Positions 2,538 to 64,000 of a DNA stretch of 64,000 bases are shown here, in pieces. The stretch lies in the NCBI RefSeq assembly GCF_002113885.1, contig NW_018408842.1, forward strand, positions 178,074 to 242,073. The letters run 5' to 3'. How positions within the stretch are numbered: position 1 is the stretch's first letter; each line of letters begins with the position of its first letter. A model generated the notes under the pieces. The model was not told the DNA's origin. It made no database searches and worked only from the letters and a program-made list of their open reading frames with translations. A program made the translations under genes and the position numbers. This DNA comes from Mizuhopecten yessoensis (lineage: Eukaryota).

Positions 2538-2720
2538 GGGTCGGGTGGCGCAGTGGATATCGCGCTCATCTCCACCAAGATGGCCGGATTCGATCCCGGT
2601 CACCTGCCCGACCACGCGGGTTTTCTCCAGATACTCCATCTTCCTCCCACATTAAGAATTAAATCCTCCGCGTACTTCCGTCAGTGCACAAAGAGAATGA
2701 TTGAGATAAGTTGGGGAAAA
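2538..2720 (+). mobile_element. tRNA-derived SINE with V-domain-like core
   Basis: A box TGGCGCAGTGG, B box GGATTCGATCC, then GGGTTTTCTCCAGATACTCCATCTTCCTCCCAC resembling the V-SINE core. Confidence 0.65.
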
Positions 2721-25529: not shown

Positions 25530-27018
25530 TACTGAACAAAAAAAGAAACGCGCGAAGTTCCCCCCTGCAGTACACCTTAGCTGTAAGGAAATAATGGAAT
25601 ATTTGGTCAGGTATTACATCAAGAACGATCTCCCTTCTCAACAATCTACCCTTAAATCAGCCAAGCGTGACGTTGTCATTGTGTGACTCTGTGAGCTTCT
25701 TTAGTCCAAATCACGCGGCGTGATCAAGCCAAGCTGGCGTTTTTCAAACAAATAATCTCAACGGATACTCTAAGTTCAGCCACATTAATTTTCCACGTTG
25801 GCATTTTGATTTCGCCATTGTCGGAGATGCCACGCTTAAGGCAAATTCAGAGGGGTAGACCATTTGCGATGTTGATGGGTGGTCATAGCCAAACTACTTT
25901 CGCACGGCAATTTGGTGTTGGCCCGTGTACAATTAACCGTTTCTGTACACGTTTCCGTGCTACTGGGTTAGTTTCCGATCGTCCCAGGAGGGGTCGTCCG
26001 CGTGTAACGACCGCACGACAAGACAGGGCGATTCGATTATCGCACTTGCGCAACAGATTCAAGACTGCTGTAGAGACTGCGTCGCATACCTTAGGTACTC
26101 ATGGCAGACCCATTAGTCCTCAAACTGCCAGAAATTGCTTGTGTGCCGAGAAAATCATTGCGCGCCGACCTTATGTAGGGCCACCTCTGACACCACGGAG
26201 ACGGCAAGTGCGTCTTGACTGGATGCGCAGACATGGCCCGAATAGGTTTGGGATGCATCGATGGAGGCGTCTGTCTGTATCGTTCAGACGGAAGAAAAAG
26301 GCTATATCGCAGACGCGGTGAGCGTTTCGCCGAGCTGCGTGGTTGAACGCGATAGATTCGGTGGGGCTTCTGTAATGGTTTGGGGAAGCATCTCCCATGG
26401 AGTAAAATTCCCCTTAGTGGTCCTGGATCAAAACCTCAATGCCGTTTGATACAGAGACCAGATCCTCCAACCACTTGTCCTTTCACTTCTCGACGTCATA
26501 ACTTAATTTTCCAGCAAGACCATGCTCGACCGCATGTTGCCAGAGTCTGTCGTGATTTTCTCACGGCAAACAACGTTCAGCCTCTGGAATGGCCCCCATA
26601 TAGCCCCGACATGTCTCCCATTGAGCATCTGTGGGATTAGCTGGACATGCGTATTAGGAAACGTCAAACCCCCCCAACTAACCGTGCCCAGTTGATCGCA
26701 GCATTAACACAAGAATGGAACAACATTCCCTTAAGGCGAATAAATGTTCTCATGAATTCAATACATAGGAGAATCCGTGCAGGGATTCGTGCAAAAGGTG
26801 CCCACACCAGGTACTTAAGTGTCGTTTTGTTTTTCGCGGGTATCCCACTTTGAGTAACTACTGCTTACACGAGTGACGTCACACAGACTTTTCTTCTACA
26901 GTATTGTAAAGAGTAGACTTGTCCTTTCATATTGATATAAAATTTTGTACAAATTTCCCAAAATATCATAGGCTTTTGATTGCATAATTTAATTGTGCGT
27001 TTCTTTTTTTGTTCAGTA
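25530..27018 (+). mobile_element. Tc1 (DD34E) DNA transposon, near full length with inactivated transposase
   Basis: TIRs TACTGAACAAAAAAAGAAACGC / GCGTTTCTTTTTTTGTTCAGTA flanked by TA; ATG 25827, HTH region, GRPR, VMVWG, FQQDHARPH...WPPYSPDMSPIEHLWD (34 aa between D and E); first catalytic Asp region deleted, frameshifts and stops. Confidence 0.95.
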
Positions 27019-28194: not shown

Positions 28195-29990
<1,796 letters not shown>

Positions 29991-31725
29991 ACTGCTGAAC
30001 AAGTCACCGCCTTACCTGTAAGCTGTTAGTGACTGACATAGTAAGGTTGTATCGCATAACAGTACATATTATCCGTGATGTTATCAAGGTGAGTAACCCA
30101 TGCAGGGTCAGGATGTGTTGGCTGTGTCATTGAAAATTGAGAATCCTCTCTTATCAATATCACGTAACATATATTTATGGTTCGTAATTCGCTATTCATC
30201 AATCACGAAGGAAGTGTATATGATGAATTAAAACCATTCTCGTTAGAAAAGTGATTATATAAAAGTAGAATACGCATGTTGTATATGTACTGTGTCGATG
30301 CGAGTTGTATGGAAATATGTCCCGAACATAGTAATGTTGTATCGTATTACAATATATATGATCTGTGAGGTTATCAACACACGCAGGGTCAGAATGTGGT
30401 GGTTGTGTAGTAGAGGTGGTTTCGTTGTAAAATTAAAACTCCTTTGTGTTTTGTTAACTGTCAGTTTATTCATCGAGTGTATGGAAAGCTTTGTAAAACC
30501 AAAAGAACCCTGCAACAAGTACAAAGTACAAGTTACAGTCATAGATATAAAACAGACATACATAATCCCATTTAACGTTTACAAATGTAAGGGAAATAAC
30601 TCTTACACGATTACATAACCTTTACCCTTACAAATCTAGTATCAACTGCGATACAATTCACAGTTACAACTTTTACGAAATACAATCAAACTCAAGCTTT
30701 GACTCCACACAAAATGACTGGACAATATATTAAATTCACAGATAGCAGTCTTCACAAACCAATGTTATTTATACTTTTTACATAAAAAACGCTATAACAT
30801 ACCTGAGTGTGGCACCAGGCCTTGGCTAAAACCTATATGTACGATGCCTTCTTAAAGCATATGCGATACACTGTAGTTTAAATAAAAGCCATCTAAACAC
30901 ATTTATCGAACCTTGGGCAAATGAGCACACGTATTAACGCCTCTTACAAAATATCAAATTACCTGACCTTCATTATTACGTTTTAATATAAAAAAATACT
31001 CTAATCATATATGATTTCTTATTAAACAAATCATAAATCATCTATACTTAGATTAGATCCAAATAGATTTGTCACTCTTATAAAACACATAATACATAAC
31101 ATTGGATATTACACAAAGACAAAGAAACACTTACATTACATCTCTCCGTCCGTCACCTATGAGTCCTAAAAAAGTACTGACGTGAGTTATTAGCCCTAAA
31201 AAACTTGCCAAAACTGACAACCCAGAACGAAGCAATGAAAACGTGATCAATGAACTACTATATGGTATACAAACGTATCAACATACGTAGAGTCCAAATA
31301 CCACAATACACCTGTAGACATAACATCACAGCATAAAATACAACACGCGGACGCGGTAGTTTCATTATTTGGAGTACGAAATATAAACATGGACGATCGG
31401 CGCGCTATGGACGGACTTGGTAATCAAACATACATAAAAACAGAGACATTTATTGAAAAAAAATGATAATCCTCTCTAATCAATATCACTTGACAGATAC
31501 TTATTGCTCGTAATGTGTTATCTATCAATCACTAAGGTTGTGAGTATAATGAATACAAAAAAAGCCATCTCCGTTAGAAAAGTGAATTATCAGACAACGT
31601 AGAATACGCATTCTGTATGTTTACTGTGTCGATGCGAATTGAAGGGAAATCTTTTCAGGACAAACTTAGTCTGATAAAAGAAAGGAAAGTGTTATCTATA
31701 AGAAAAAAAAATATTGTCACATTTA

Positions 31726-34646: not shown

Positions 34647-36296
34647 TTAAAATATTTTGTCACTCTCTACGTAAACGGCATTTTCAAATTTGTTTTCCTC
34701 CAGAATTTGGACAAGCTTAGCGACTGGGGTATCTGGAAGCGTCATCTTTCCATTAGCACGAGTTTCTGAAAATAAGTAAGTGGCCTTATAAATATTAATT
34801 GACCTCAGTTTTAACTGTAGGCTACGCATTCATCTAACACACTATGAACCTTTAAGCCGATGAAACTTTACTCAAAAAGTATACAAATGGCAAACCATAT
34901 ATTCAAATATAGAAGTAAATAAAATTACGCTTAACACAATGAATCATTAAATCAGTTGAATCATGCGAGACAACAGTTATTGAACCGCATGAGAGTAAAA
35001 TACTACATATCATTTAAATGAACGTCTTACTACTGACATTGTTAAAAACAGGAAATGAACTCCAAAGAATTCCCAAATCTTTCTCTGCATTGGTAATACT
35101 ATGAAACACTTACTTTTTATCCTGTCTACAATAGACTTATTAAAAGACAATCGTTCAGCTTGTTTTGGCATTTCGGTGTCGGCAGAACCTGGTGCGAACG
35201 TCAGTATCCTCAGAGAGGGCTCCTCTTCGGCCAGTACACGCATATACATGTCACGGGCAGCCTTACCTTTAGGTAGGAATAAATAAATGTTGCATCCATC
35301 GTAATTAAATATCAAACAACAAAGTGGAAAAAAGTATTTGTCAATAACGTTACAATAATAAAAATACTACCTTAAACGGGAACAATGACGTCACAACATT
35401 GTACCATTTTACTGATTAAGTTAGTAATTGAAATTCCATGGAAACATTCATGTAACGGGTACGATGCTAAAGGTTGAGATCGAAGACCATTTTTCTCAAC
35501 ACAAGTCCTTCCTAATCAAACTGCATGCAACCAGAAAGAACTCTGTTATACATTATATAAAGTCGACGATTTGGAATATAAGTCGGAGAAATCCATGTTT
35601 GAAAAATGTATCAAAAATATTAAACGTGATACATGTACCTTAACCAATATATCAATGATAAAGTCAAATGCTATGCAAATATTAATTGATTAACTTAATT
35701 ATAACAATAACTGAGTGAAATATGATATGGTTTTTAAAGTGATTTGAATGTCGTAACTAACCTGCACAGTAAAGATGAACTGATGCCGTGGGAGTTGAGG
35801 TGTGTGCTGACGTCATATTGACGATGACCCGAGATTTTGTAGAATCGGAGAAAGTCTGGAAGAAACTCGAGTTAAGAAGGATCATCCCGGTCAGGTTGAT
35901 GTCGAAGTACTTCCGAACTGACGTGGAATCGGAAAGTTCCAGCGATCTTTTTGACACATCACAAAGAGTAGCACAATTGTGTATGACCATATATTGCTCA
36001 AAGTCATTTTGAGAAAAAGTGTTTTCTTGTAAAAGTCTTGTAAATATGCCTTTGAAATAATATTTGTCTTCCAAGATTCCCTGGTCAAAATGCCGCACCA
36101 AAACGTTGATAGTCGGTGCCACAGACAACACTTCTGACTTGACACTGTCCATAGGCAAAACATCCATGAGAACCATGGCGGAGTTAGGGGGAAACTTGGC
36201 CCCAAACTGAAGTGCAATTGATTTCCCCAGTCCTCTGCTGGCGCCGGTAATGGCTACAAAGGTTTTCTTTAGAAATATGTTCGGGTGTTCCGCCAT
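34647..36296 (-). CDS. SPR: Sepiapterin reductase-like SDR, copy F, 268 aa; exons 36296-35762, 35266-35114, 34765-34647
   Basis: TGASRGLG, VLMDVL, VNMTSA, YCAG|KAARDM; 535+153+119 nt in frame; ends NAVYVESDKIF*. Confidence 0.92.
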
Positions 36297-39506: not shown

Positions 39507-42176
39507 CTAAAGTATTTTGTCACTTTCTACGTAAACAGCATTTTCAAACGTGTTTTCCTCCAGTATCTGGACAAGCTTAAAGATTGGGGTATCTGGATGT
39601 TTCGTCTTTCCATTTGCTCTTAATTCTGAAAGACAAGTATCCTTATTTAATTTGATTTCACGTGTACCCACTAAACATATTGACTGACCATCAACATTTA
39701 CTCAGTTGCTTTACAGTGTGCACACATTGTATTCATTTATTGAAACACTTTATTATGTATTGTCAATTCAAGATTACTGATCTTGTGTGTTTAAGTTTAA
39801 TATTAAATTTGCAATAACTAGAACATTTGTGGAAAATGAACAAAAGTAGAGTGCATTAACATAAAAAATGCAATATAAGATGAAGTCGCAAGATCAAATT
39901 TAGGTTCCTAACTACATGTTGTAATTACGTATAAAACATTGTCGAATCAATGACTAGTTGATTCATACGGTACCAGAGTTATTAACCTGTATCTAACACA
40001 AACATGTTTATCTTGGTACTGCTATTGTAACGACTTAAAATAATCTCCAAAAGAAAACTAATTATTTCTTAGCATATGACCCAGTATTACAATGAGCACA
40101 CGTACCTTTTATTTTTCCAACAAAATACTTATTCATAGAAAATCTTTCAACTTCTTTTGCCATTTCGGTGTCGGCGGAGCCCGGTGCGAACGTCAGTATC
40201 CTCATAGACGGTTCCTCTACGGCCAATACACGGATGTACATATCACGGGCAGCCTTACCTATAGGTAGGAGTACATTTTGCATACATCGTAATTAAATAT
40301 GAACAGCAAAGTTAAAAAAAAAGTAATAGTCAATAACGTTACAATAATAAAAATACTACCTTCAACGGGAACAACATTGCCTTACCTAAAAGTTAACGTT
40401 AACAACAAGGTACATAACATAAATAACTATCAATTACGTTATAAGGATCTAAGCAAAAATTACGAAAAAATCTACAACCTTCAACCCAAGCAACAACTAC
40501 ACATAATAATATTTTATTTAGTACAATGTAAGTCAATTATTTAATTTCTGTGTCAACAAAAAAGGGCCTGTATGATTCCCTTACTCCAAACCTGCCGGCA
40601 ACAAATTGTATCAAACTAAAAGTTGCTATCATTATTAAATAATTCATTATAAGTGAAACGCCATCGCATAACGGTGTTGTCGGTTAATACGAAATAATAT
40701 TAACGAGACAATAATAACTGCTAAAGTTATTAAATACATCATATGAGGCCACAGTCATACATTCAGGATTTTTACTGCTGACCTTGATACAAGGACCATT
40801 CCCGATTAAAATTTGTCAAAAGTCTGATCATGATCCTGTGATTCGTGGCGAGACACCAATTTGTAAAAACATTTATTTAATCACGACAACAATCAGATAT
40901 TGTACAGGAAGCGTCCCGATTCAGTCGTTTCAAGCCGAATTCGTCTTGATTCTCCCGTTCTCAATCCGAATCTGATCCAATTTGTATCTTCTGCATAGTA
41001 AAAAAACCGACCGAATCTGCCTCGACAGCGTCTCGATTCTCCCGAACGTGATCCGACAGAGATCAAACAGTGACCGGACAGTGAACCGACGCGTTCGGCA
41101 AGATCTGGACGCAATCTGGACTCAATCGGCAAGAAACGGCAATGAAACGTTTCTCCAAATCATGCCTGTTCATCACAACAGCGTCTCCATCCACAGGACA
41201 CCGTCCAGACACCGTCCAGACCACACAGAACATTGTTAGGATTTTGATCCGATACAGCAGATTCTATCACGACATCATCATGATTGTTTTTCCCGAATGT
41301 TTTCGGAACGCACCTTACTGTCGAGAGTGCTTGGCCGACCTCTCTGGACCTTTCCCGATCAGTAGGACTCTGTAACGAGCGTATACGACTGCGTTCAGAC
41401 AATGATCGGTTATTCCAGATCATTGAGGATAGTAATCCGACTTTTTCGCTTTTCGTGACGTAGCGCTGTCTGATCTCAAACGGGAGCCATACTCGGCACT
41501 GTGTGAACGCCGCATACGGAGTTATGAATACTTAATGGTCAAAGTTTTAATCAATTAAATGAAACTATTGATCAAATAATTGAACTGATGGCATTAGATT
41601 AATGAATTATGCTATGTCATTTAAGTGGTCATTACCTGCACAGTAAAGATGCAATGATGCAATGGGAATTGAGGTAGCTGCCGACGTCATATTGACGACG
41701 ACACGAGACTTTGTAGAATCCATGAAAGTCTGAAAGAAGCTCGTGTTCAGGAGGATCATCCCGGTGAGGTTAATGTCGAAGTACTTCCGAACTGACGTAG
41801 AGTCGGAAAGTTCCAATGATCTCTTTGTTACATCACCGATAGTAGCACAGTTGTGAACGATCATGTATTGCTCAAAGTCATCTTCCGATATCTCATTTTC
41901 CAATAACAGTTCATTAAATATGTCTTTGAAATAATCCGTGTTTTCTAAGTTTCCCTGGTCATAATACCGCACCAAAACTTTGATATTTGGCGCAACAGAC
42001 ATCACTTCAAATTTGACACTCCCCAAAGCTCGACTATTCCTGGCCATGAGAACTATGACGGAGTTAGAGGGAAGCTTGGCACTCAATTGCAGTGCTATAG
42101 ATCTCCCCAGTCCTCTGCTGGCCCCGGCTATGGCTACAAAGGTTTTCTTTAGAAGTATGTTCGGGTGCTCCGCCAT
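39507..42176 (-). CDS. SPR: Sepiapterin reductase-like SDR, copy G, 270 aa; exons 42176-41636, 40258-40106, 39625-39507
   Basis: AGASRGLG, VLMARNSRAL, VNMTSA, YCAG|KAARDM; 541+153+119 nt in frame; ends NAVYVESDKIL*. Confidence 0.92.
40744..41514. mobile_element. GC-rich ~770-bp insertion in intron 1 of copy G (MITE-like, possibly PIF/Harbinger)
   Basis: Absent from the paralogous intron of copy E (flanks AATAACTGCTAAAGTTA and GGA(G/A)TTATGA join there); weak inverted ends TGAGGCCACAG / CTGTGTGAACGCCGCA; many CCGA/TCGG motifs. Confidence 0.55.
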
Positions 42177-44320
42177 ACTGTTGTTGTTGAAGTCACCTTT
42201 TAACACATATGTTACTACTGACTGTTGTAAAAAGACTGTGTGATATACATGTACATGTAACAGTATATCTTATCTGTGTTGTTATGCATAGTTGTAATCT
42301 AACGTGGGGTATATATTAGGGGTTAAGTGGTCTAAGCGTTGTCCTTGACCTTCCTACTATACATGTTACATTGTCACGTGTGTCACAAGTAGTGTCAGTT
42401 TATCTCATATGTTCGCCACAAGTAGTGTCAGTTTATCTCCTATATAATAACTATGAGCACTAAGCAGTCAGGCATGGCGTACATCATGTAGCACCTGACG
42501 CTGTCTGCGTCCGTAGAACAGCTACCTATGGAATAGCAACGGCAATATCCAACAATTGGGACGGTCCGCACGAGAAGACAAAAAACACTGAAATGGGTGG
42601 TGTGAGTTATAATTCGGAACCCCTAAGATTTTTTTTCATTCCACTCCGTTGTTGGCCAAAAGGAACGAACCCCTGTGGTTCAGACGATGCATTTACATAC
42701 ATTGGAACACTAATTGGAGTAGTCATTAGTCTATGTACTGTCCAAAAGTCCATTGTCAGCTTTTATTAATTATATAACCACGGACTCAGATCCTGTAATG
42801 TAACAAATTGATGTTTTTGCACCCTGTGCAGTACACGGCTCCAAGTCTAGGTTAAAACCATAACTAAAGGGTAAGCATGTTATACACACATTCTATCGGT
42901 ATAATGTTCAATGTGATTAAGGATTTTGTCAACAAAGTCCCTTATTTTAATTTTTGAAATTTTAATATGTATTATTAGAAACAAATCTTCATTATATGTA
43001 AATGTGAAAAGGATATTATGAAATACGAAAATTCTGCATTACCGTCGGGTCAATATGGTTTCTCCAGTATAACGGAATGAATCGTAAGGGTACACAGGTT
43101 GTGGCACATTTGAAAACATAATTCTTTCTTGTTTGCAATATTGAGGTTGGAATATTTTCAAAATATAAAAGTTTGTTTTAATTCGTGTGAGTATGATAAA
43201 ATTATTTTTACAACATCACAATTTAATCAATAAAATACGATAGTGTATAGTACCTTGCAATACCCTTTTGTATAATGGTTTCATCCATTATATAAGAGCA
43301 TGACCCCCGCTCCAAACGGTATGTCGTCTGCTGGATAACGGAGGTATTACATCAGTGCACATATGCGGACGTTTTAAACATAACATACGGACACCATCAA
43401 TAAGTACGTTATCTTATTTCATAATGTTCATATTTCAATGAAACTCAACAATGAGGTCATATCTATTTCATCCTTTTCAGTTACTGCAGCGTTCTTATTA
43501 TTTTTTTTCATAATGAATACTTCGAAACTACATTATAAAGATGGACATATTTCTCATCTTTCATTGAAAACAAACAACAAAAACATATAGTTGTCAGTGA
43601 TTAAACGTAGCACAGTATTTCGTATGGTTTTGTCCATGATGAGGATTTCAAAAGCAAAGATACACAATCCCAGTTAACAATTGAACATATGTCACTATTT
43701 CACAAAATCGTCATCGGATGAAGACCACTCCAAAAAAGAAGTAATTATGCGCTGTTTTCTTTACTAAACGATTACTTCTTGTTTTGTATCTAGGTGTAGA
43801 TGTTTTGTTCTTGTTGTGGGGTACTTTGTCACGATTTTCTTCTCTGATTCTACCGCAGGAACAAAATTCGTGGGGTGGCTTTTTTTTGCATACATCAAGT
43901 GTACGTAGGAGCTTCACTATTGGTGCTTGGCGCAGTTGGAGCAATGCGTGTTGTTCCATGGGCGGATGCTCTTTCAAACGTACATTTAGAAGTAGATGTC
44001 TGTTCCCCAGTGTTACCCGTTGCAATTTCACTAATTCCGATTTCATCGTCGGCCACGCTGTCAGCGTTACTTCTAATGATGGGAGTATTGCCATTCTTTT
44101 GAGATGACATTAACTAAGTGTTGAAGAGCGGGGTGGTATAGGTGAAGTTGAGTAAGGGTTCCAGTGTGAATATACTTTTTAACAAACGAAAAAACGCCTC
44201 AAACTAGTTGTCATTGGAAGTGTGTGTGGTTCCTCAAATTTATTTTAGTAGTCCCGTCCCTTTGAAATGACCTTCTGTGTGCTTCCATGCACCTTCTGTT
44301 GGGTTTGTGTCAACCTCCAT

Positions 44321-52793: not shown

Positions 52794-54269
52794 TTACAAG
52801 ATAGTCATGCTGTAGGATTCAGGGTTGTTAAGAATGGTCATGAAGTCGCGACGGAGTTCTTGGGATGATGTGTAACCCACTGGAAGCTCCAGCGTGTTGC
52901 TACAGGTGTGCGCCACAGGATGCATGGCCAGACCCTCCACACGGCTGAAAAGCACCTTTATAGGGCTATCCTGTGGAAGGGCGTCTGAACCTGTGAGGAA
53001 TACCAAGAAGTGCGATAGGTCCTCAGGACACAGGACGGAAATAAAGTCTTTCAAGAAATAAAAGACACGATCTTCCTCTTCACGCAAGTGTTCTACATCA
53101 GTCTCAATACGGTCAATCACTCTCTGCGGTGTTGGTTCGAGCACTCTGTATATACGATTTAATTCTTCTATGTTCAGTCGATTCCAAAAGAGTTCTAAAT
53201 GAGAAGGTGGAATGCCGGACTTCATCCAAGTTGTAAACATCATGCAAGTTCCACAGAGCTGTGTTTTGCCTAAGTTCAAAATATTCTGTCGAAAGTTTTC
53301 CTTTTTAGGTTGACCTGTGAGTGAATACCTGGTGAACATATCCAGCAATGAGCTGACATTTCCTTGTGTAAGGTTATCGAAATCAGCCAGCCCTTTCCTG
53401 GTTAACATTCTCTCATTTGGAGTGAGAAACAAAAGAACGTCCTTCAAAATTGACTCTTCATCTTCAACAACAGCACTGTGAATCATTGTGTACAGCATGC
53501 ATCTGAAAAACAACAACATGATTCATTATGTGTTCAACGCAAAACATATCTTATGCACCTGGAATAACTAGAACGGTGCATTTTCCTTTTAAAACGATGT
53601 TTGCTTTATACAGGAATTGCTCTACATAGTAGCTAATGACGGATGCGGATTCAGATTTCAACAAAGTTAAGGTGTGAAAATATATTTATTAAAATAAATA
53701 AATCTATTTATTATTGAATGGTTTAATATTGATAGGTGTTTGTATAAAATTATTACACACGAAAACTCGTAGCCAAACAAGTTATAAACATTTATTGCAG
53801 CCTAAATTTTACATCCTGTGGTTTTTTTTTTACGTTTCCTACATCTATAAATGAATAATAATACAGATTTACATAAAGATGTTTAAATGAGCAGATATTT
53901 AAAATAGATGTAAATACCTTGAGAGTCGGACAGGAAATGTACCAGTTAGAGCCACGCTGTGACTGAGAATCCTTCCTAGAATCGGGTACACACGCTGGGC
54001 CTCTGCAAATTTACTGGCCCCTAAATATGGAACAAGGGAGTTCTCTCCCCTGAAATATTCTCTGAAGGCTCTGTCCCAAAAGGTCGAGAACGCATCCTTT
54101 GTTAGACCACCTGTGTCCATTCCGATTTCCCCTACAAACCTTACATACAAGCGTTTGGTAACAATCGTCTCGTCATTATACAAATCCAGTAAATTAGCAA
54201 GGATAGACTGTCGGTTCAGGTCCACGTGTTGTATCTCGTCACCAATACTTCCTTGTAGAGCTTCCATAC
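52794..54269 (-). CDS. HECT E3 ubiquitin ligase domain (G2E3-like); last two exons 54269-53918 and 53502-52794
   Basis: VRFVGEIGMDTGGLTKDAF, GRILSHS, FLVFLTGSD, HPVAHTCSNTLELP with catalytic Cys; phase-2 GT/AG intron joins LSR|CML in frame. Confidence 0.9.
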
Positions 54270-57200
54270 CTGAAATTAGTGTTTATTGTTTTTATAATGT
54301 CATCACAAAATGACCGTAATTTTTATCATTAAGTTTGATTAAAATGGTAATTCTGAGTTGAAATTATATAAACTGTACATACAAAATGTACACATTTGAA
54401 GGAAGCGTGATCAATCACTGTTATATATAATAACACATAGTCTATAAAACAGCATAATTGATAGCATGGATACCTGATGTGAAATACGACAGAAATCATT
54501 ATTTCGTATAGTTATAAACTATGTATACATGTATATATGTTAATTGATATGTCCTGTGGTGTTTTTTTTTACAGTACTGAGTATTGGCTCAATATGCCTA
54601 TCACATGGTTGTTTGGTAGAAATCGTTAAAATAGTTATTGATACAGTAGTGCATTGTGACGTTTACAATATTTAATTAATATATATAAAAGAAGCTTCAT
54701 TTGAAAAAAATGTACATTCCTTTTGTAATGTTAGTCAAAAACGGTACATCGTATAATAACAAACAGTTAACCTTGTTTAATATCAGTCATACATGATACA
54801 CAATAAATGATAAAACGTTTGTTACGAAAAATAGAATTCATTAAATCTGTTAAATATTGATTGTTCATGAAAAAAAGTACAATAAAAAAAATGAATATTG
54901 ATAAATAATTAACATTTGTTTTAAATATCAGTTTTGAATGAAAATTATTGTGTAAGACTTAATTCTTTGTAATACATAGGAGTTATAAATGACATCAGAT
55001 AAATCATATATAATATACACTTACATTGTGCTATGTTCGGAGAAAACTGCTCCACCCTGTTAGCATCATCCGTGTCCAACTGGTTAACAACCTCAGCTAT
55101 TAAATCGAGCAATTAGTGCAAAATTAATCAAATAACACTAACAAAAGGAATAGCAAACTACACAAGAAGGGCAAAACTTTATTTTTTCATGTAAAGACCA
55201 TTGAAATCTGGTAAAAATATCTTAAAGCAGGTACAATCTAACTTTTATGTAATAACTCTGAATCAACAACGAAAGTTACTCACTAACTTACTTCCGAAAT
55301 AATTACATAATTAAACGAAGTATCATTTTGTACCTAACAGTGATTTGTTTCTTATAAAAAATTATGTACTTATATTTGAACGTCACATTACAATGCAACA
55401 TACCTTATTCAATTACAGTGTATTTGATATAAAATTTCACTTCTTATATAATGTTAATTTTTGAATTAGTATACAAAGTGCTGTTTGCTTTTTGAGGTTG
55501 TCTACAGTTCCAATAGAAACTTTGAAGTTCACTTATTGGTAGATTTTTACCTTGACCCCTGCGTAATTCTTGAATTTGTCCTTCTGGTTCAGCGTCTGCA
55601 CCAGGAACTAAAATTAAAGGATGTCTCCATATTAAAATATTAAATTGTACCTGTAAGATAATGTACCGAGTCACTATTATATTTCTTATAATGAATCATA
55701 GTTTATGTCCCCAATGCTGAAGAGAAATTCTGATAATAACGCATCTTATGACGATCAAGTGCGTATGTGTTGTGGAACCAATAAGACCCCTAAACATTTC
55801 TTATTTGGGGATTATCAATTTTAAAGTCTGTTTGTTTGTTGTCTGCTGTTTTATTGTGTGTGAGTGTGTGTGTGTTTGTTGTTATTTTTTGTTTTTGTTC
55901 CTATGAGTTTGGCTTTCCACATGCCTACTTTTTTGTTATTTTTTGTTATTGTTCCTTTGAGTTTGGCTTTCCACATGCCTACCTTTTTGTTAATTTTTGT
56001 TTTTGTTCCTTTGAGTTTGGCTCTCCACATGCCTACTTTTTTGTTATTTTTTGTTTTTGTTCCTTTGAGTTTGGCTTTCCACATGCCTACCTTTTTAAAT
56101 ATATGGTTCTGTCAGTATATTTACCTAATCACTATTGTCTATGTCATTATCAACAGTCAAATGTTTCGATGTCTTTTTGAAGTACAAGGTAACAGTACTA
56201 CAGTTACCATCCGCGAAAGTGACATTAACACTAAATCTGTCAGTGGCTTCCTCTAAAATAACTTTTTATGAACTGTTTTGTAAGTGTCCTCCCGTCTCTT
56301 CTGAATGTTTCTTTGTTCATAAGTATCGATGTCACTTTGGCTGCAAGTGGCGTCCTTAAACCTACCATCAGTGTCTTCAATAGTAAAGCTATTAATCTTT
56401 AACTTAATTTAATAATAAAAAGAAATTGAACAAATATTATACAGAATATATATAACATATCAACAAAGTTATATACAAAATATCCTATAAATGTCACTAG
56501 AGTTCTACATATAGAATATCAATAACATATCAAAATTATTCTTTATATTAAAAATGTGTATAAAGAAAATATATTACACATTAACATAAACTTATATACA
56601 TAACATGCATTCTAAATCAACATAGTTCTTGATACAGAACGTGTTATACATATCGGCGTGAGTATATGTATATAATATATATTTTTCCTATCGATAATTT
56701 CAAACATAAAATATATAATACATAATTCGATATATAAAATATCTAATTCATATCTATACATTAAATATAGCATATCTACATAGTTCTTTATATCGAAAAT
56801 GTATAACATATCAATATAATGATATTAAATAAATTTAGAATATAAATTATGTGTGCAATGAAATAAATCGGGTACATTGTATATGTTATGACCAACCCAC
56901 ACACAAAATCTTAACAAAATTAAGAAATGAAGCAAAACGCGAAAATGTGTTCAGGAACATGATATGCATATAAGATACCTTGAATAAAAGGCGGAACAGC
57001 TCCATCTCTTTGGTACACTGGTTCCGGTACATCAATAAAGCCATCAACTGAAACGTGATAAAAACATATCTACTCAACAGATGTACTCGGATAACATAAA
57101 ATAGTCCCACGAGAACAAGGGCAGGGCAAGGAGTTGAAATTGTGTTTGTCATGTTATTTATTAAGGGGGTAGTTGTACCTAAACAAAAAAGGTTTTATTC

Positions 57201-60200
57201 TGATTAGATTGTATCTTAACCTTAAAACTTTTACAACAAGCGCTCTACAAACCTATTCTAAATACTCTTCTTGGTCCGGAAGGCAGTGTGTAAGGGGGTT
57301 ATAACATGAAAGTGAACCGGAGTACCACGAGAAAGCTCAAGTAATTGTCCTGGTAGGTAACATCCAATGTTCAATGTTAACTGAGCGTTAAAATATCAAG
57401 GCTACTTGCCTTATACCTTACGGCAACTAATTTAGGATAAAAGGAATCTACTAATTGTTATTACCTTCCTGGAATAAACGACGATCTGTTTCAGGCTGGT
57501 AATCAAAATATGCTGCAATGATAATTTACAATAAAATACATACGTACAGAAGATGGGAGATCCTCCGATTGAATATCAAATCGATATAAATTCCCATGCT
57601 TCTGATACATGTAGTTACAATTCCGGTCTGATGACCGATTCCCTTCTCTTATCAAAACTATTTACGTGCGCTACTCATAAACTCATTCCCTTACTTACTG
57701 ATAACTAATTACCTTCTCTACTGATAACTAATTACCTTATCTGCTTATAACTAATTCCCTTCTCTACTGATAACTAATTCCCTTATCTACTGTAACTAAT
57801 TCCCTTCTCTACTGATAACTAATTCCCTTATCTACTGATAACTAATTCCCTTCTCTACTGATAACTAATTCCAATCTCTACTGATAACAATTACCCTTCT
57901 CCACTAATAACTAAATTCCTTCTTTACTTATTAATAATTAATTACCTTATCTACTGATAACTTATAACCTTCTCTACTGATAACTAATCCCCCTTTCTAC
58001 TGATAACTAATGCGCTTCTCTACTGATAGCTTTTTACCGTCTACTGATAACTTATTCCCTTCTGTACTGATAACTTATTACCTTCCCTACTAATAACTAA
58101 TTCCCTTCTCTACTGATAACTAATTCCATTCTCTACTGATAACTAATTCCATACTCTACTGATAACTTTTTACCGTCTACTGATAACTTATTCCCCTCTG
58201 TACTGATAACTAATTACCTTCCCTAATAATACCTTATTACCTTCTCTATTGATAACTAATTCCATTCTCTACTGATAACTAATTACCTTTCCTACCCATG
58301 AATAATAGCTTCTCTACTCAAAACTAATTCCCTTCTTTCCTCATAATATTAATAACCTTATCTACTGATACCTAATTCCTTCTCTACTGGTATTGAATTA
58401 CCTTCTCTACTATAACTAATTATATAAGCACCTTCCCTACTGATAACTAATTACCTTCTCTACTCATAACTAAAAACACTCTCTACTGCTAACTTATTCC
58501 CTGTTTTACTGATACTTAATTACTTACTCTTCTCATAAATAATTTTCTTTTCTACTTATAATTAATTTCCATCTCTACTGATAACTATTACTTACTCAAC
58601 TGATAATTAATTACCTTCTTTCCTCATAACTAATTCCCTCTCTACTCATAACTATTTTCCTGCTCTACTGATAACAAAGTATCTTCTCTTCCGATAACTA
58701 ATTGCCTTCTCAACTGATAACGTATTACATTCTCTTCTCATTAGTTATTGCTGCTCTACTGATAACTAATTACCTTCTCGACTGATAACTTATTACTTTC
58801 TCTACTCATAACTAATTATCCTTTCTACTGATAACATATTCCCTTCTCGACTGTAAACTAGTGACCTTCTCTACTCATAACTAATTACCGTGTCTACTTA
58901 TAACTAATTCCCTTCTCTGCTGATAACTAATTCCCTTCTCTGCTGATAACTAATTCCCTTCTCTGCTGATAACTAATTACCTTCTCTGCTGATAACTAGT
59001 TACAAAGCATTGAATTGGCCGCTCAACTGAAGATTTTCTCTGAAATACGTGACACGCAGAACGATTAATCTTTTTGTCTACCCTGGTTGACTTTTTATCT
59101 CTGCTTCAAGATTTCAGAAACATAAAGATAAATCTCTGTCTGGTAAAGTATACCTGTATTTCCTCTATTGATGGATAAAACGTACAGATAAATCTCTGTC
59201 TGGTAAAGTATACCTGTATTTCCTCTATTGAGTAGATATAACGTACAGATAAATCTCTGTCTGGTAAAGTATACCTGTATTTCCTCTATTGAGTAGATAT
59301 AACGTACAGATAAATCTCTGTCTGGTAAAGTATACCTGTATTTCCTCTATTGAGTAGATATAACGTACAGATAAATCTCTGTCTGGTAAAGTATACCTGT
59401 ATTTCCTCTATTGAGTAGATATAACGTACAGATAAATCTCTGTCTGGTAAAGTATACCTGTATTTCCTCTATTGAGTAGATATAACGTACAGATAAATCT
59501 CTGTCTGGTAAAGTATACCTGTATTTCCTCTATTGAGTAGATATAACGTACAGATAAATCTCTGTCTGGTAAAGTATACCTGTATTTCCTCTATTGAGTA
59601 GATATAACGTACAGATAAATCTCTGTCTGGTAAAGTATACCTGTATTTCCTCTATTGAGTAGATATAACGTACAGATAAATCTCTGTCTGGTAAAGTATA
59701 CCTGTATTTCCTCCATTGAGTAGACATAACGTACCTCCTCCTCCAAAGATTGGGATTGGATCAGGCATTCCTTGTGGTTCCACTGGGTGAGTAGCTTGTG
59801 TTTGCTGGACTTGCCCTTCGAGTAAAATGTAAATATATAAAACAATACGTTCATCATATCAATTCAAGGTACTCTGTATACTGTCCATAATTCTAGATAG
59901 GCTGTACATTTTCAATACCGAATTCTATGTTTACTGTTTGCCTTTCACAGCTTAGTATTGGTGCACTAGATACCCTACAAAACAAATAGAGTTGTGTTAC
60001 ATTGGTATGTAACTCCCTGGTATCACAGAAAAGCAACTGCCTGTCCTACTGATAAAAAATGACGTTCTATTCAAAACTATTCAAAACTATTCAAAATTGA
60101 TCCCCGATCATGTTGAACACCACGTGAATACAGAATCTGGCCGCTTTGTTTTACTGGAGTTGAAAGCGAGTATCATTATTTGTTTATATGTTCAAATGCT

Positions 60201-63200
60201 TATGTAAGTCAAATCCGCAGAAAATATATACCTATTTATTACCTCTAATCCATCTGTTCATAAAATGAAAGGGTTAATATCAATATGCAATGTTAGATTA
60301 TTATCAAATCTATCGCTGTTCATACAATAACTAGAAAGACAATTAAAAAATAATATGTGAATTTCACACATCAAACTGTAAACTTTTGTATACATATAGA
60401 TATTACTGACAAACCTAACATAATTGCATTGTATAATGAGTGTGGTTATAGCTTGTTTATCATGGTTTGTTTGTTATATCCCTGATTGAAGGTATTTGTA
60501 TCTGTCTATTACAGTATTGCATGATAGGATTGTAACACTGTCTTTTATACCTTTGTAATAGTATATGGTATGATGAGTATGATAGTGACTATTATGCCAT
60601 GGTATGATTGCACTGTATGGTGTGGAATACTATCTATAATACATGTATCATGTAGTGCGAGTAATATATGTGTGACACTGTAATAATATTATTGTAGGAT
60701 TGTACTGTAAGATGGATACACCAGTGCCTGCTATACCACTGTGTGAACGCACGGTATGGGTAGATGAAATGCTATGTATTATACCATCGTAACAGTATTG
60801 TAAAATGAGTGTAATACTGTATATCACTGTATGATGAGTGTCATTGTATGCGCAGTGCGTTATATTGTCTATTATAACAAGGTATGATAGTTCGTATGAA
60901 CAGTGTAATAGTGTGTTTATCATTGTATGAGGAGTGTAATAATTTCCACTATATTATTGTTCGCTTGCATAGTAAGATGAATGCTTTACGGTCAACCATA
61001 TCATTGTTATATTGTACTTTTTGTTGCGCACAATAGTGTGTCTGAGTGATAATAAAAATCTCTGAAAATCTCTGAATCTCTGACACCTAATCCCGGTCCT
61101 ACTTAACAGATAACGAACCCCCGTTCAGACGGATAACCTACTCCCGTCCAACTGATACTGTAGCTTATCCCCTGTCCTGTTCAAAACTAATCCCATATCC
61201 TAATGATAACTAATCCCCCGTCCTATTGACAACTAACCCCTGTCCTGTTCAAAACTAATCCCATATCCTATTGACAACTAACCCCTCGTCCTATTGACAA
61301 CTAACCCCTCGTCCTATTGACACCTAACCCCTCGTCCTATTGACAACTACCCCCTGTCCTATTGACAACTAACCCCTGTCCTATTGACAACTTACCCTGT
61401 CCTATTGACAACTAACCCATGTCCTATTGACAACTAACCCCTGTCCTATTGACAACTAACCCCTGTCCTATTGACAACTAACCCCTGTCCTATTGACAAC
61501 TAACCCCTGTCCTGCTAGTAATCCCCGCCCACTGTTTACTAATCCCCGTCGTACTGATAACTATTCTCCGTTCTTCTGACCAACTGATAAACTAAATTGA
61601 TAATTAAATGATAACCCAAAATGACTAATACATTACAATCATCCCTATATTCATTTTATGTCAATTCATTCACTGTAGATGTGCAGCAAGCTAGTCATTT
61701 TCAATTTTATCTTCACTAAAAAAACTATTAATTAAATATGATTACACAGTAAACGTCTACTGATAATCTATAGAGATACAATAAACCTCTACTGATGATC
61801 TATAGATACACAGTAAACCTCTACTGATGATCTAAAGAGACACAGTAAACCTCTACTGATGATCTATAGATACACAGTAAACCTCTACTGATGATCTATA
61901 GATACACAGTAAACCTCTACTGATGATCTAAAGAGACACAGTAAACATCTACTGATAATCTATAGATACACAATTAACCTCTACTGATGATCTATAGAGA
62001 CACAATAAACCTCTACTGATAATCTATAGATACACAATTAACCTCTACTGATGATCTATAGATACACAATAAACCTCTACTGATAATCTATAGATACACA
62101 ATTAACCTCTACTGATGATCTATAGATACACAATAAACCTCTACTGATAATCTATAGAGACACAATAAACCTCTACTGATGATCTATAGATACACAATAA
62201 ACCTCTACTGATAATCTATAGATACACAATTAACCTCTACTGATGATCTATAGATACACAATAAACCTCTACTGATAATCTATAGAGACACAATAAACCT
62301 CTACTGATGATCTATAGATACACAATAAACCTCTACTGATAATCTATAGATACACAATTAACCTCTACTGATGATCTATAGATACACAATAAACCTCTAC
62401 TGATAATCTATAGAGACACAATAAACCTCTACTGATGATCTATAGAGACACAATAAACCTCTACTGATAATCTATAGATACACAATTAACCTCTACTGAT
62501 GATCTATAGATACACAATAAACCTCTACTGATAATCTATAGAGACACAATAAACCTCTACTGATGATCTATAGAGACACAATAAACCTCTACTGATAATC
62601 TATAGATACACAATTAACCTCTACTGATGATCTATAGATACACAATAAACCTCTACTGATAATCTATAGAGACACAATAAACCTCTACTGATGATCTATA
62701 GAGACACAATAAACCTCTACTGATAATCTATAGATACACAATTAACCTCTACTGATGATCTATAGATACACAATAAACCTCTACTGATAATCTATAGAGA
62801 CACAATAAACCTCTACTGATGATCTATAGAGACACAATAAACCTCTACTGATAATCTATAGATACACAATTAACCTCTACTGATGATCTATAGAGACACA
62901 ATAAACCTCTACTGATGATCTATAGAGACACAATAAACCTCTACTGATAATCTATAGATACACAATTAACCTCTACTGATGATCTATAGAGACACAATAA
63001 ACCTCTACTGATGATCTATAGAGACACAATAAACCTCTACTGATAATCTATAGATACACAATTAACCTCTACTGATGATCTATAGAGACACAATAAACCT
63101 CTACTGATAATCTATAGATACACAATTAACCTCTACTGATGATCTATAGATACACAATTAACCTGTACTGATGATTATAGAGACACAATTAACCTCTACT

Positions 63201-63915
63201 GATGATCTATAGAGACACAATATACCTCTACTGATGATCTATAGATACACAATAAACCTCTACTGATGTTCTATAGAGACACAATAAACCTCTGTTAATC
63301 TACTTAAACCTCAACAAACCTGGCACTCCTTGCTCCTGTATAGGATGGGAAGTGTGTATCTCGTGGGGAGGGGGAACTGTTACGTTGGCTCTCACTTCAG
63401 AAATCTGCCTGGTGAAATTGTCAATGATGCGTGCAGCCTCGATGTGAATGTCTTTGACCATGTCTCGCAATGCGCTGTATTCCCCAACCCTGATTATATG
63501 TTTTTCTTCCAGAACCTAATATTGTTCAACAAAAAATAGAACGAGAAATCGAGTAAATAACGACAAACAGCAAAACATACTAATGATGATAATACAAATA
63601 TTGACCCGAATTAGCTCTTTCTAGGTATAGTGTTAATTGATGGCGTCACAACAATACTAACCAGAAATACATTTTGTGCAACACAGTAATTCAATCCAGC
63701 GGTTTATCAAAACAAGTATAATTTACCTGCATTGCCGTTAAGATGCTCCTGCTAGCCTGCTGCACAAACCTTGGTGTAAGATATATTGATAACTGAAATT
63801 TGAAAACTTCCCAGCTATCTTGCAGTGAGGGATGAATGTATCCATGTAAGGCTTTACACATTTCAGAATGAAGTTGGCGGACCCTGAGCTCGGCTTCCTC
63901 GGCAGTGTAAGCCAT
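52794..63915 (-). CDS. Proposed full gene: DED-like domain, linker, HECT ligase, ~605 aa; exons 63915-63727, 63515-63320, 59815-59735, 57512-57465, 57047-56979, 56252-56208, 55607-55551, 55096-55025, 54269-53918, 53502-52794
   Basis: All junctions GT/AG and phase-compatible (0,1,1,1,1,1,1,1,2); total 1818 nt without internal stop; small exons were identified by eye, so the set may be incomplete. Confidence 0.6.
55880..56096 (+). repeat. 54-bp minisatellite, 4 copies (intronic)
   Basis: GAGTTTGGCTTTCCACATGCCTAC at 55905, 55959, 56013, 56067. Confidence 0.95.
57685..59002 (+). repeat. 23-bp minisatellite, roughly 55 copies (intronic)
   Basis: Unit CTACTGATAACTAATTCCCTTCT; most degenerate in the centre. 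Confidence 0.95.
59125..59734 (+). repeat. 61-bp minisatellite, 10 nearly identical copies (intronic)
   Basis: Unit AGATAAATCTCTGTCTGGTAAAGTATACCTGTATTTCCTCTATTGAGTAGATATAACGTAC. Confidence 0.97.
61080..61600 (+). repeat. 22-bp minisatellite (intronic)
   Basis: Unit CTATTGACAACTAACCCCTGTC. Confidence 0.92.
61744..63300 (+). repeat. 32-bp minisatellite, about 48 copies, with 128-bp higher-order structure (intronic)
   Basis: Unit CACAATAAACCTCTACTGATGATCTATAGATA with three variable positions. Confidence 0.97.
63320..63915 (-). CDS. Two exons encoding a death-effector-domain-like (death-fold) module
   Basis: Spliced peptide MAYTAEEAELRVRQLHSEMCKALHGYIHPSLQDSWEVFKFQLSIYLTPRFVQQASRSILTAMQ|VLEEKHIIRVGEYSALRDMVKDIHIEAARIIDNF; FKF and LEEKHIIRVGEYSAL resemble the DED patterns LKFL and LExxxxIxxxNxxxL. 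Confidence 0.6.
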
Positions 63916-64000
63916 ATAGCTGTTTAGGTATAAACTGTAAAGAGATAACTCATACTTAGACGATAATTATAACTTGACAATCTAATTTAAACGCAGATTT

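What the first reader, a model, noticed from the sequence alone, without database searches (positions are those of the whole stretch)
52794..63915. Putative death-effector-domain plus HECT E3 ligase fusion gene
Seen: an ATG exon and a second exon missed by the ORF track splice in frame to a ~100-aa helical module with DED-like motifs, and phase-compatible small exons link it over 9 kb to an intact G2E3-like HECT domain with its catalytic Cys. Established: DEDs mediate homotypic assembly of FADD/caspase-8/FLIP complexes; vertebrate G2E3 has N-terminal PHD/RING fingers, not a DED; death-fold proteins are expanded in bivalves. Inference: a ligase recruited directly to death-signalling complexes to ubiquitinate caspase or adaptor partners, an unusual domain architecture.
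Basis: partly seen in the sequence, partly recalled or inferred. Interest (0 to 1): 0.8.

Follow-up and report, generated by a model that had tools for sequence, protein, structure and literature searches.

The report
Scallop DED-plus-HECT ubiquitin ligase gene
This is a real, transcribed scallop gene that joins a divergent death-effector domain, the kind that assembles cell-death complexes, to a HECT ubiquitin-ligase domain; databases already list the gene model but no one has labelled the death domain.

Summary
On the minus strand, nine coding exons (63915 to 52794) give a 590-aa protein. It is identical to the public RefSeq model "uncharacterized protein LOC110464724" of Mizuhopecten yessoensis.

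- **N-terminal module.** Exons 1-2 encode about 105 residues that Pfam does not recognise. A profile of 100 relatives hits caspase-8, cFLIP, FADD and PEA-15 DEDs (best E 5.5e-10). The AlphaFold model (pLDDT 94) is a six-helix bundle whose nine best structural matches are all DEDs.
- **Linker.** Five small phase 1-1 exons encode a poorly conserved linker.
- **HECT domain.** Exons 8-9 encode a complete HECT domain with its catalytic Cys555.
- **RNA evidence.** Contigs from three studies show the exon 1-2 and exon 2-3 junctions. I did not see the exon 3-to-8 junctions myself.
- **Ortholog.** Pecten maximus has a collinear ortholog: DED 51%, HECT 72% identical.
- **Family.** The scallop genome holds over 100 such DED-like modules, fused to caspases, STAND NTPases, GTPases and Ig receptors. 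Only this gene pairs one with a HECT domain.

Recruitment to DED assemblies and ligase activity are inferred. "G2E3-like" is unverified. I rate it a new variant of a known kind, of moderate interest.

The parts
63727..63935 (-). Exon carrying the start codon. The ATG is at 63915-63913 and the coding part is 63915-63727 (63 codons, phase-0 donor). In RNA the exon begins at 63935, after an AG acceptor. It encodes helices 1-3 of the DED.
   Evidence: P0136 residues 1-63 map exactly. RNA contigs in X2, X9 and X12 cover 63725/7-63935, then continue into a 5' non-coding exon outside the window. It scores 43.9 bits against the family profile.
63320..63515 (-). Coding exon 2 (196 nt, ends in phase 1). 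It encodes helices 4-6 of the DED (to about 63387) and the start of the linker.
   Evidence: Exact map of P0136 residues 64-129. The RNA joint skips the 211-nt intron 63516-63726 in three runs and is absent from the DNA run X15. It scores 39.6 bits against the family profile.
59735..59815 (-). Linker exon 3 (81 nt, phase 1-1).
   Evidence: Exact map. The 30-letter loose end of the RNA contigs downstream of exon 2 maps uniquely to 59785-59814.
57465..57512 (-). Linker exon 4 (48 nt, phase 1-1).
   Evidence: Exact map of P0136 with AG/GT sites. Not seen in RNA by me.
56979..57047 (-). Linker exon 5 (69 nt, phase 1-1).
   Evidence: Exact map of P0136 with AG/GT sites.
55551..55607 (-). Linker exon 6 (57 nt, phase 1-1).
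   Evidence: Exact map. This is the only linker exon with detectable similarity to the Pecten maximus linker.
55025..55096 (-). Linker exon 7 (72 nt, phase 1-1, GTAAGT donor).
   Evidence: Exact map.
53918..54269 (-). HECT exon 8 (352 nt), the start of the HECT N-lobe.
   Evidence: Exact map. 72% identical to P. maximus. Aligns to E6AP HECT residues 33-68. Many RNA-like runs hold 0.69 of the sampled words of 52794-54269, close to the exon share of 0.72.
52794..53502 (-). HECT exon 9 (706 nt of coding sequence plus the TAA stop): the rest of the N-lobe and the C-lobe.
   Evidence: Pfam HECT E 8e-11 on this exon alone. Exact map of P0136 residues 356-590.
52902..52904 (-). Codon of the catalytic Cys555 (motif AHTCSN), 35 residues from the C-terminus.
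   Evidence: Aligns with the active-site Cys of E6AP. Conserved in P. maximus and in all five sequences of alignment A4.
61743..63293 (.). Intronic satellite (32-mer, 48.5 copies) starting 27 nt after the exon 2 donor. Further intronic arrays lie at 61169-61513, 59119-59734, 57638-59003 and 55875-56096.
   Evidence: Tandem Repeats Finder.

Best explanation
The region is one expressed protein-coding gene of the Yesso scallop, RefSeq LOC110464724 (590 aa). It has nine coding exons in the window plus a non-coding 5' exon about 2.2 kb beyond the window end. The protein has three parts. (1) Residues about 5-106 form a divergent death effector domain. It belongs to a bivalve lineage-specific expansion with over 100 copies in this genome. 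(2) Residues about 107-238 form an acidic, Pro-rich, poorly conserved linker. It is built from five symmetrical phase-1 exons, each of which could be skipped without breaking the frame. (3) Residues 239-590 form a complete HECT domain with catalytic Cys555.

Most likely mechanism (inferred): the DED docks by homotypic death-fold contacts onto DED assemblies. Candidate partners are FADD-like and caspase-8-like proteins, or other members of the scallop's large DED-like family such as DED-caspases, DED-STAND NTPases and Roc-COR-DED proteins. Docking would bring the HECT ligase next to its substrates, and possibly concentrate it, so that it ubiquitinates the partners or itself and tunes death or immune signalling.

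Shown: the gene structure, the DED fold and family membership, the intact HECT with its Cys, transcription and the exon 1-2-3 splicing, and conservation in Pecten maximus. Inferred: exons 3 to 8 being joined in the same mRNA (from two RefSeq models only), ligase activity, DED-DED recruitment, and the identity of the substrates. My confidence is about 0.9 in the architecture and about 0.45 in the mechanism.
For: Gene model: P0136 (XP model of LOC110464724) maps at 100% onto nine exons with canonical splice sites.

RNA: in three RNA-like runs from three studies, contigs cover only the exons. They skip intron 63516-63726 and continue from 63320 into sequence that maps uniquely to the start of exon 3. 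The DNA run covers the introns and shows no joint. The same runs hold the exon share of the words of HECT exons 8-9.

Ortholog: P. maximus XP_033761985 is collinear. The DED has 54 of 106 residues identical with no gaps, the linker 39 of 132 with indels, and the HECT 254 of 352 with no gaps.

DED: the family profile hits caspase-8 DED2 at 5.5e-10 and cFLIP at 4e-8. FADD and PEA-15 DEDs appear only weakly, at about 0.02-0.03, above the usual 0.001. 62 of 100 family members hit Pfam DED, best 2.8e-13. P0136 scores 90.4 bits against the profile built without it. The AF2 model of P0136:1-112 has pLDDT 94.4 and six helices. Its top nine structural matches are all DEDs: MC159 Z 12.0, PEA-15 Z 11.6 with rmsd 1.9 over 88 residues, and FADD Z 10.4 with rmsd 1.9 over 86. 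PYD scores 9.4-9.6 and DD/CARD 7.7 or less. The ortholog's model gives the same result.

HECT: Pfam 46.3 bits covering profile positions 38-305 of 306, with the Cys aligned to E6AP.

Context: the same module sits on caspases, nSTAND3-ankyrin proteins, AIG1, Roc-COR, Ig receptors and trypsin-like proteases. This fits the adaptor-plus-variable-effector pattern described for bivalves (PMC8195603).

Precedent in trans: HECTD3 binds caspase-8 DEDs and ubiquitinates caspase-8 (PMC3847339).
Against: The protein itself does not reach Pfam's DED model. The RxDL charge-triad motif is absent: the sequence reads HIEA where caspase-8 DED1 has RLDL (alignments). The helix-2 Phe/Leu position is F40-Q41 here but T-K in the ortholog, so the canonical type-I surface is not conserved. 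Structural Z values of 10-12 fall in a range the tool warns can be generic for helical bundles, so the DED call rests on Z together with the sequence profile. I did not see the exon 3-to-8 junctions in RNA. The HECT domain is divergent, and a paper reports that the G2E3 HECT is non-functional in vitro (PMC3673628, citing Brooks 2008), so catalysis is not assured. No interaction or activity data exist.
Confidence: 0.6

Rival explanations
1. Merged gene model: the DED exons (plus some linker exons) and the HECT exons belong to two separate transcripts, which the annotation pipeline fused in both scallop species.
For: I did not observe the exon 3-to-8 junctions (limits). An in-frame ATG sits at 54267, two bases into exon 8, and exon 3 contains a Met. 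No other genomic copy places a DED-like module next to this HECT type.
Against: Exon 2 is spliced onward into exon 3, and the contigs run 221-225 nt further. Exons 4-7 contain no Met and keep the frame open into exon 8. Every linker exon is phase 1-1, and exon 8 starts in phase 1 behind a good acceptor. Two independent species models keep the same order, with both domains conserved and ungapped.
Confidence: 0.06
2. Pseudo-ligase or decoy: the HECT domain does not transfer ubiquitin, as reported for G2E3. The protein would act as a DED-only-type regulator, like FLIP or PEA-15, capping or blocking DED assemblies. The HECT fold would serve only as a binding scaffold.
For: The HECT domain is divergent: 46 bits on Pfam, and only short stretches align to E6AP. 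G2E3 and G2E3-like HECT domains are described as highly divergent, and the G2E3 HECT as non-functional (PMC3673628).
Against: The catalytic Cys and the HTC...LELP...Y motif are conserved in both orthologs and in the paralogs. The HECT domain is 72% identical between species with no gaps, so it is the most constrained part of the protein.
Confidence: 0.2
3. The death fold does not act homotypically. It would bind a non-death-fold partner (as the PEA-15 DED binds ERK2), or fold back on the HECT domain as an autoinhibitory module, so the gene would have no direct link to death-signalling complexes.
For: The RxDL motif is absent and the helix-2 patch is not conserved. PEA-15 is among the best structural matches.
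Against: The module family is found on caspases, STAND NTPases and receptor tails, the usual setting for homotypic adaptor use. The best sequence match is caspase-8 DED2, a filament-forming DED that also lacks RxDL.
Confidence: 0.14

Closest known systems
RefSeq LOC110464724 (Mizuhopecten yessoensis, 590 aa, P0136) and its ortholog XP_033761985 'E3 ubiquitin-protein ligase TOM1-like' (Pecten maximus, P0015)
   Same: P0136 is this gene, identical residue for residue. P0015 has the same DED-linker-HECT order.
   Different: The database entries carry only a HECT annotation (PF00632) and automatic names. The N-terminal DED is not annotated, and the names (uncharacterized, TOM1-like) do not reflect the architecture.
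Death effector domains of caspase-8, cFLIP, FADD, PEA-15 and viral FLIP MC159
   Same: Six-helix death fold. The family profile matches them at E down to 5.5e-10, and the best structural matches have Z 10.4-12.0.
   Different: Only 8-15% identity. There is no RxDL motif. The domain is below Pfam's DED threshold on its own. It is attached to a HECT ligase rather than a caspase or a death domain.
Bivalve lineage-specific expansions of DED or death-like adaptors fused to variable effectors (Kaur et al. 2021, PMC8195603)
   Same: A constant DED-like adaptor is combined with variable effector domains: caspase, STAND NTPase, AIG1 GTPase, HEPN, ankyrin, Ig. There are over 100 copies in this genome.
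   Different: HECT is not among the effector partners named in the passages I read (the search terms HECT, bivalve and DED; 12 of 21 places shown). I did not see a TRADD-N domain next to this DED, but I did not test for one.
HECTD3, a human HECT E3 that binds caspase-8 DEDs (PMC3847339)
   Same: A HECT ligase acting on a DED protein, regulating extrinsic apoptosis through ubiquitination of caspase-8.
   Different: HECTD3 recognises DEDs in trans through its DOC domain and has no DED of its own. Here the DED is built into the ligase, and the function is untested.
G2E3 and the 'GL-Metazoa' divergent HECT families (class IV of Grau-Bove et al. 2013, PMC3673628)
   Same: A short, divergent HECT domain with variable N-terminal arrangements.
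   Different: There are no PHD/RING fingers. Clade membership was not tested here. Structural similarity to the G2E3 cluster (TM 0.68) equals that to HERC3 and SMURF1.

Membership tests
Death effector domain (DED, death-fold superfamily) | Six antiparallel amphipathic helices in a death fold | tested here: met
   AF2 model of P0136:1-112 has pLDDT 94.4 and six helices. The top nine structural matches are DEDs, Z 9.8-12.0.
Death effector domain (DED, death-fold superfamily) | Sequence-profile membership (Pfam PF01335 at its gathering score) | tested here: not met
   The window's exons, P0136 and P0015:1-110 give no DED hit. At family level the link is significant: the profile matches caspase-8 DED at 5.5e-10, and 62 of 100 members hit PF01335, best 2.8e-13.
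Death effector domain (DED, death-fold superfamily) | E/D-RxDL charge triad in helix 6 | tested here: not met
   By the alignments, the window has HIEA at the RxDL position, much as caspase-8 DED2 has KSLL.
Death effector domain (DED, death-fold superfamily) | Helix-2/helix-5 hydrophobic patch (FADD F25, caspase-8 F122/L123) | tested here: inconclusive
   F40-Q41 aligns with caspase-8 F122-L123, but the ortholog has T-K there.
Death effector domain (DED, death-fold superfamily) | Homotypic DED-DED binding or filament formation | not testable with these tools
   Needs pull-down, two-hybrid or imaging experiments.
HECT E3 ubiquitin ligases | C-terminal bilobal HECT domain of about 350 aa above the Pfam threshold | tested here: met
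   PF00632 scores 46.3 bits against a cut-off of 23.9, covering profile positions 38-305 of 306.
HECT E3 ubiquitin ligases | Catalytic Cys about 35 residues from the C-terminus | tested here: met
   Cys555 in the motif AHTCSN aligns with the E6AP active-site Cys. It is invariant in alignment A4.
HECT E3 ubiquitin ligases | Ubiquitin thioester formation and transfer | not testable with these tools
   Needs a biochemical assay.
G2E3 | N-terminal PHD/RING-like zinc fingers | tested here: not met
   Pfam finds only HECT in P0136. The N-terminus is a DED followed by a linker.
G2E3 | HECT domain falling in the G2E3/GL-Metazoa clade | tested here: inconclusive
   Atlas TM 0.68 to the G2E3 cluster, against 0.67-0.70 to HERC3, NEDD4-type and SMURF1. 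Named relatives are called TOM1-like and E3A-like. No phylogeny with reference sequences was possible.

The most novel reading that the evidence does not exclude
A scallop-lineage E3 ligase carries its own DED. It would co-polymerise with DED filaments, either FADD/caspase-8-like or one of the more than 100 DED-like immune proteins, and be switched on by induced proximity much as caspase-8 is. Ubiquitination of the death or immune signalosome would then be hard-wired in cis. The fusion would be a natural Rosetta-stone link, showing that HECT ligases are core regulators of DED assemblies.
Probability: 0.3. Interest if true: 0.65.

Novelty: new variant of a known kind. Interest (0 to 1): 0.5.

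Why it matters
DED assemblies control extrinsic apoptosis, necroptosis and inflammation, and in mammals they are regulated by ubiquitin ligases that bind them in trans (HECTD3, CUL3, TRAF2, ITCH). A ligase with a built-in DED would be a natural experiment showing which enzymatic activity evolution couples directly to DED platforms. It would also give a simple handle, a two-domain 590-aa protein, for studying how ubiquitination tunes death-fold signalosomes in an animal with a hugely expanded death-fold repertoire. The finding also shows that over 100 DED-like domains in scallop genomes escape Pfam, so bivalve death-fold counts are underestimated. Expectations should stay modest. Bivalves shuffle death-fold adaptors onto many effectors. 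This combination was found only in two scallop species, and its function is untested.

Tried and rejected
- **Pfam on exons and paralogs.** Scans of the single exons and of ten paralogous single-exon modules gave no DED hit. A family profile was needed.
- **Foldseek against PDB.** It ranked only DEDs at the top, but at E 0.2 or worse, so I relied on VIA-align plus the sequence profile.
- **The look-up of encoding contigs for the P. maximus protein.** Nothing was returned, so I made no exon comparison or dN/dS with the ortholog.
- **Word searches with the HECT part.** Alone, and as a five-sequence profile, they returned few relatives and no G2E3-named protein.
- **PF26054 (PHD_G2E3).** This family is not in the genome-search library.
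- **A 637-aa ORF on C5106.** I checked it as a possible true G2E3, but it has only a HECT hit. G2E3-likeness therefore stays open.
- **Search for a second DED-HECT locus in the genome.** No contig carries both a DED-like module and this HECT type apart from this one.
- **Findings search by words.** It returned nothing.
- **Direct exon 2-to-exon 8 splicing.** It is phase-compatible, but RNA shows exon 2 joined to exon 3 in the three runs laid.
- Exons were searched one by one by reference. Whole-protein work used the public protein P0136, which a tool returned and which is identical to the spliced product. I did not lay reads on stretches containing the long intronic satellites, because the tool forbids long repeats; this is why I did not examine the exon 3-to-8 junctions. 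An N run in locus L017 was left untouched.


Full report
**What is there**

The window is AT-rich eukaryotic DNA. Its assembly has 987.6 Mb in 82,659 contigs. A public protein of Mizuhopecten yessoensis maps onto it at 100%, so the organism is the Yesso scallop.

On the minus strand I first worked out four exons by eye:
- an ATG exon, 63915-63727;
- a second exon, 63515-63320;
- two HECT exons, 54269-53918 and 53502-52797.

Pfam recognised HECT only in the last exon (E 8e-11) and found nothing in the two upstream exons.

**The N-terminal module is a divergent DED**

Exon 1 found 15 weak paralogs in the same genome. In most of them the whole module lies in a single open frame of 120-150 aa.

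Aligned with these paralogs, the window's two exons cover the two halves of one domain. The predicted splice restores the paralogs' continuous sequence to within one residue.

A profile of that alignment finds at least 104 copies in the genome. It finds 133 representative proteins among 1.84 billion. The ten I looked up come from M. yessoensis, Pecten maximus, Pinctada and Tegillarca, which are all bivalves.

No paralog reaches Pfam's DED model on its own. Three further results place the family among the DEDs:
- A 100-sequence profile hits solved caspase-8 DEDs at E 5.5e-10 and cFLIP at 4e-8. FADD and PEA-15 DEDs appear only weakly, at about 0.02-0.03, with no other coherent family in the list.
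- 62 of the 100 members hit PF01335 at E 0.1 or better, best 2.8e-13. No other Pfam family is hit by more than two members.
- A profile that excludes this gene and its ortholog scores exon 1 at 43.9 bits (profile positions 4-48) and exon 2 at 39.6 bits (positions 58-97). Shuffles reach at most 5.8 bits. The public full-length protein scores 90.4 bits over residues 11-104.

The structure models agree. AlphaFold2 with the family alignment gives a six-helix bundle for the ortholog's residues 1-110 (pLDDT 96.1). It gives the same for this gene's own residues 1-112, taken from the public protein P0136 (pLDDT 94.4).

Against 48,161 PDB representatives, the nine best matches of this gene's model are all DEDs:

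| Match | Z | rmsd / aligned residues |
|---|---|---|
| MC159 vFLIP | 12.0 | 4.0 / 95 |
| PEA-15 | 11.6 | 1.9 / 88 |
| caspase-8 (five entries) | 10.4-11.5 | 4.0-4.5 / 93-98 |
| FADD | 10.4 | 1.9 / 86 |
| PYD | 9.4-9.6 | – |
| DD and CARD | 7.7 or less | – |

The ortholog's model gives the same ranking. Foldseek also ranks only DEDs first, but with weak E-values.

The tool warns that Z below about 13 can be generic for helical bundles. The DED call therefore rests on the fold together with the independent sequence-profile link.

Two canonical DED features are missing or uncertain. The RxDL motif is absent: the sequence reads HIEA, much as caspase-8 DED2 has KSLL. The helix-2 Phe/Leu position is F40-Q41 here but T-K in the ortholog (features as described in PMC4558505).

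**One gene with the HECT domain**

Among the long family members, one protein has the module at residues 3-106 and HECT at its C-terminus. It is P0015, XP_033761985, 'E3 ubiquitin-protein ligase TOM1-like isoform X2' of Pecten maximus. It is collinear with the window's exons.

A word search with P0015 returned P0136, 'uncharacterized protein LOC110464724 [Mizuhopecten yessoensis]', 590 aa. P0136 maps residue for residue onto nine exons of the window:

| Exon | Coordinates | Length (nt) |
|---|---|---|
| E1 | 63915-63727 | 189 |
| E2 | 63515-63320 | 196 |
| E3 | 59815-59735 | 81 |
| E4 | 57512-57465 | 48 |
| E5 | 57047-56979 | 69 |
| E6 | 55607-55551 | 57 |
| E7 | 55096-55025 | 72 |
| E8 | 54269-53918 | 352 |
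| E9 | 53502-52797 (stop 52796-52794) | 706 |

All splice sites are AG/GT. Every intron after E2 is phase 1. The five linker exons are multiples of three, so each can be skipped in frame. This fits the three linker isoforms annotated in P. maximus. The rest of the 9-kb gap is intronic satellite DNA.

**RNA evidence**

Fourteen small runs from eight studies hold exactly 0.69 of the sampled words of 52794-54269. The exon share of that stretch is 0.72, as expected for spliced RNA.

I laid three such runs (three studies) and one DNA-like run on window 63294-65415. I chose this satellite-free stretch because the tool forbids long repeats. Four things follow:
- The three RNA-like runs cover only E2 and E1.
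- They skip exactly the 211-nt intron 63516-63726, with GT..AG on the minus strand.
- The DNA run covers everything and shows no joint.
- Downstream of 63320 the contigs run on for 221-225 letters.

The first 30 of those letters map uniquely and exactly to 59785-59814, the start of E3.

Upstream, the contigs leave the genome at 63935, behind an AG. They continue into sequence that maps once, at contig position 244276. That corresponds to window coordinate 66203, about 2.2 kb beyond the window end, so there is a non-coding first exon outside the window.

The DED exons are therefore transcribed and spliced onward into the linker. I did not see the junctions from E3 to E8. They rest on the two RefSeq models, on the open frame with no Met in E4-E7, and on the conserved order.

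**Conservation**

Between the two scallops:
- the DED is 54/106 identical with no gap;
- the linker is 39/132 identical with indels;
- the HECT domain is 254/352 identical with no gap.

This is the pattern of two constrained domains joined by a free linker.

**The HECT domain**

Pfam HECT scores 46.3 bits over profile positions 38-305 of 306. Cys555 (52904-52902), 35 residues from the end, aligns with the E6AP catalytic Cys. It is invariant among the orthologs and paralogs.

The nearest paralogs are about 40% identical. They are single-exon HECT units on other contigs, with no DED-like module nearby.

Among all HECT relatives recovered, only P0136 and P0015 carry the DED module. The Argopecten relative P0138 has a different, low-complexity N-terminus.

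Whether the domain is 'G2E3-like' stays open:
- Database names are inconsistent: TOM1-like, E3A-like.
- The Atlas structural score to the G2E3 cluster (0.68) equals that to HERC3 and SMURF1.
- I could not obtain reference G2E3 sequences.

The literature describes G2E3 and 'GL-Metazoa' HECT domains as highly divergent, and the G2E3 HECT as non-functional (PMC3673628). This is a caveat for catalysis.

**Context and mechanism**

The same DED-like module sits in several settings:
- N-terminal to caspase domains;
- N-terminal to nSTAND3 NTPases with ankyrin repeats;
- N-terminal to an AIG1 GTPase and to trypsin-like proteases;
- C-terminal to Roc-COR proteins;
- on the cytoplasmic tails of Ig-domain receptors;
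- next to HEPN domains.

The closest genomic paralog of this gene's DED lies 3' of Roc/COR-like exons.

This is the adaptor-plus-variable-effector pattern described for bivalve death-like domains (PMC8195603). The passages of that paper I searched do not list HECT among the effectors.

The most likely mechanism is therefore homotypic recruitment of a HECT ligase to DED assemblies. It would be a cis-encoded counterpart of HECTD3, which binds caspase-8 DEDs and ubiquitinates caspase-8 in trans (PMC3847339). This is inference.

The rivals are:
- a catalytically dead HECT acting as a decoy or scaffold;
- a DED used for a non-homotypic or autoinhibitory role;
- a merged gene model, which is now unlikely.

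**Verdict**

The gene model is already public. What is new is the recognition of its DED and of the DED-HECT combination, found only in two scallops within the reach of these searches. The overlapping first-stage note s1-570333 describes the same two DED exons seen from a neighbouring window. They are the 5' part of this gene, not a separate unannotated gene.

**Procedural statement**

Exons were searched by reference one at a time, and whole-protein analyses used the tool-returned public protein P0136. N runs were left alone.

Noticed in passing
window 13929-14468, 22566-23105, 29418-30002, 35757-36296, 41607-42206 (minus strand): Five tandem paralogous first exons of about 180-200 aa ([24 protein letters not shown]...), a short-chain dehydrogenase family. 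Pfam adh_short scores E 4e-11 on the first copy. This is a local gene cluster next to the DED-HECT gene.
   Followed up: partly
window 25806-26321 (+): An ORF with Tc3/mariner-type transposase HTH domains (PF01498 E 2.5e-8). It is probably a transposon remnant between the dehydrogenase copies.
   Followed up: partly
window 59119-59734 and 61743-63293: Two intronic satellites abut splice donors. The 61-mer array (10 copies, 98% matches) starts at the first base after the exon 3 donor G, and each of its units repeats a GTACGT-like string. The 32-mer array (48.5 copies) starts 27 nt after the exon 2 donor. Whether they affect splicing is unknown.
   Followed up: no
L001:2536-2697 (window-equivalent 64762-64923, beyond the window end): A very high-copy repeat in the first intron. 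Its summed contig depth is about 27,000 in the DNA run, and it is also present in the RNA-like runs.
   Followed up: no
G000 contigs C5228 (308717, 312682), C4077 (276732, 277415, 279467), C572, C5456, C4690, C5353, C5436 and others: At least 104 DED-like modules that Pfam mostly misses, often in tandem clusters a few kb apart. P0001 and others carry two modules in tandem, as caspase-8 does.
   Followed up: partly
L014 (G000:C796:114500-120500), 2089-3318 minus strand: The closest HECT paralog on C796 is split by an in-frame TAA into open frames of 210 and 199 aa. Its near-identical copy on C2252 is an intact 412-aa frame. The C796 copy may be a young pseudogene or an assembly error.
   Followed up: no
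G000:C5515:244276-244301 (window-equivalent about 66203): The non-coding 5' exon of the DED-HECT gene, identified from the RNA loose end. The gene therefore starts outside the window.
   Followed up: partly
P0136 residues 160-166 and 218-224 (linker exons 4 and 7): The linker contains PETD|R and LDTD|D, which resemble caspase-8-type cleavage motifs. The P. maximus linker has AEID|F. I noticed this by eye only, and cleavage separating the DED from the HECT domain is speculation.
   Followed up: no
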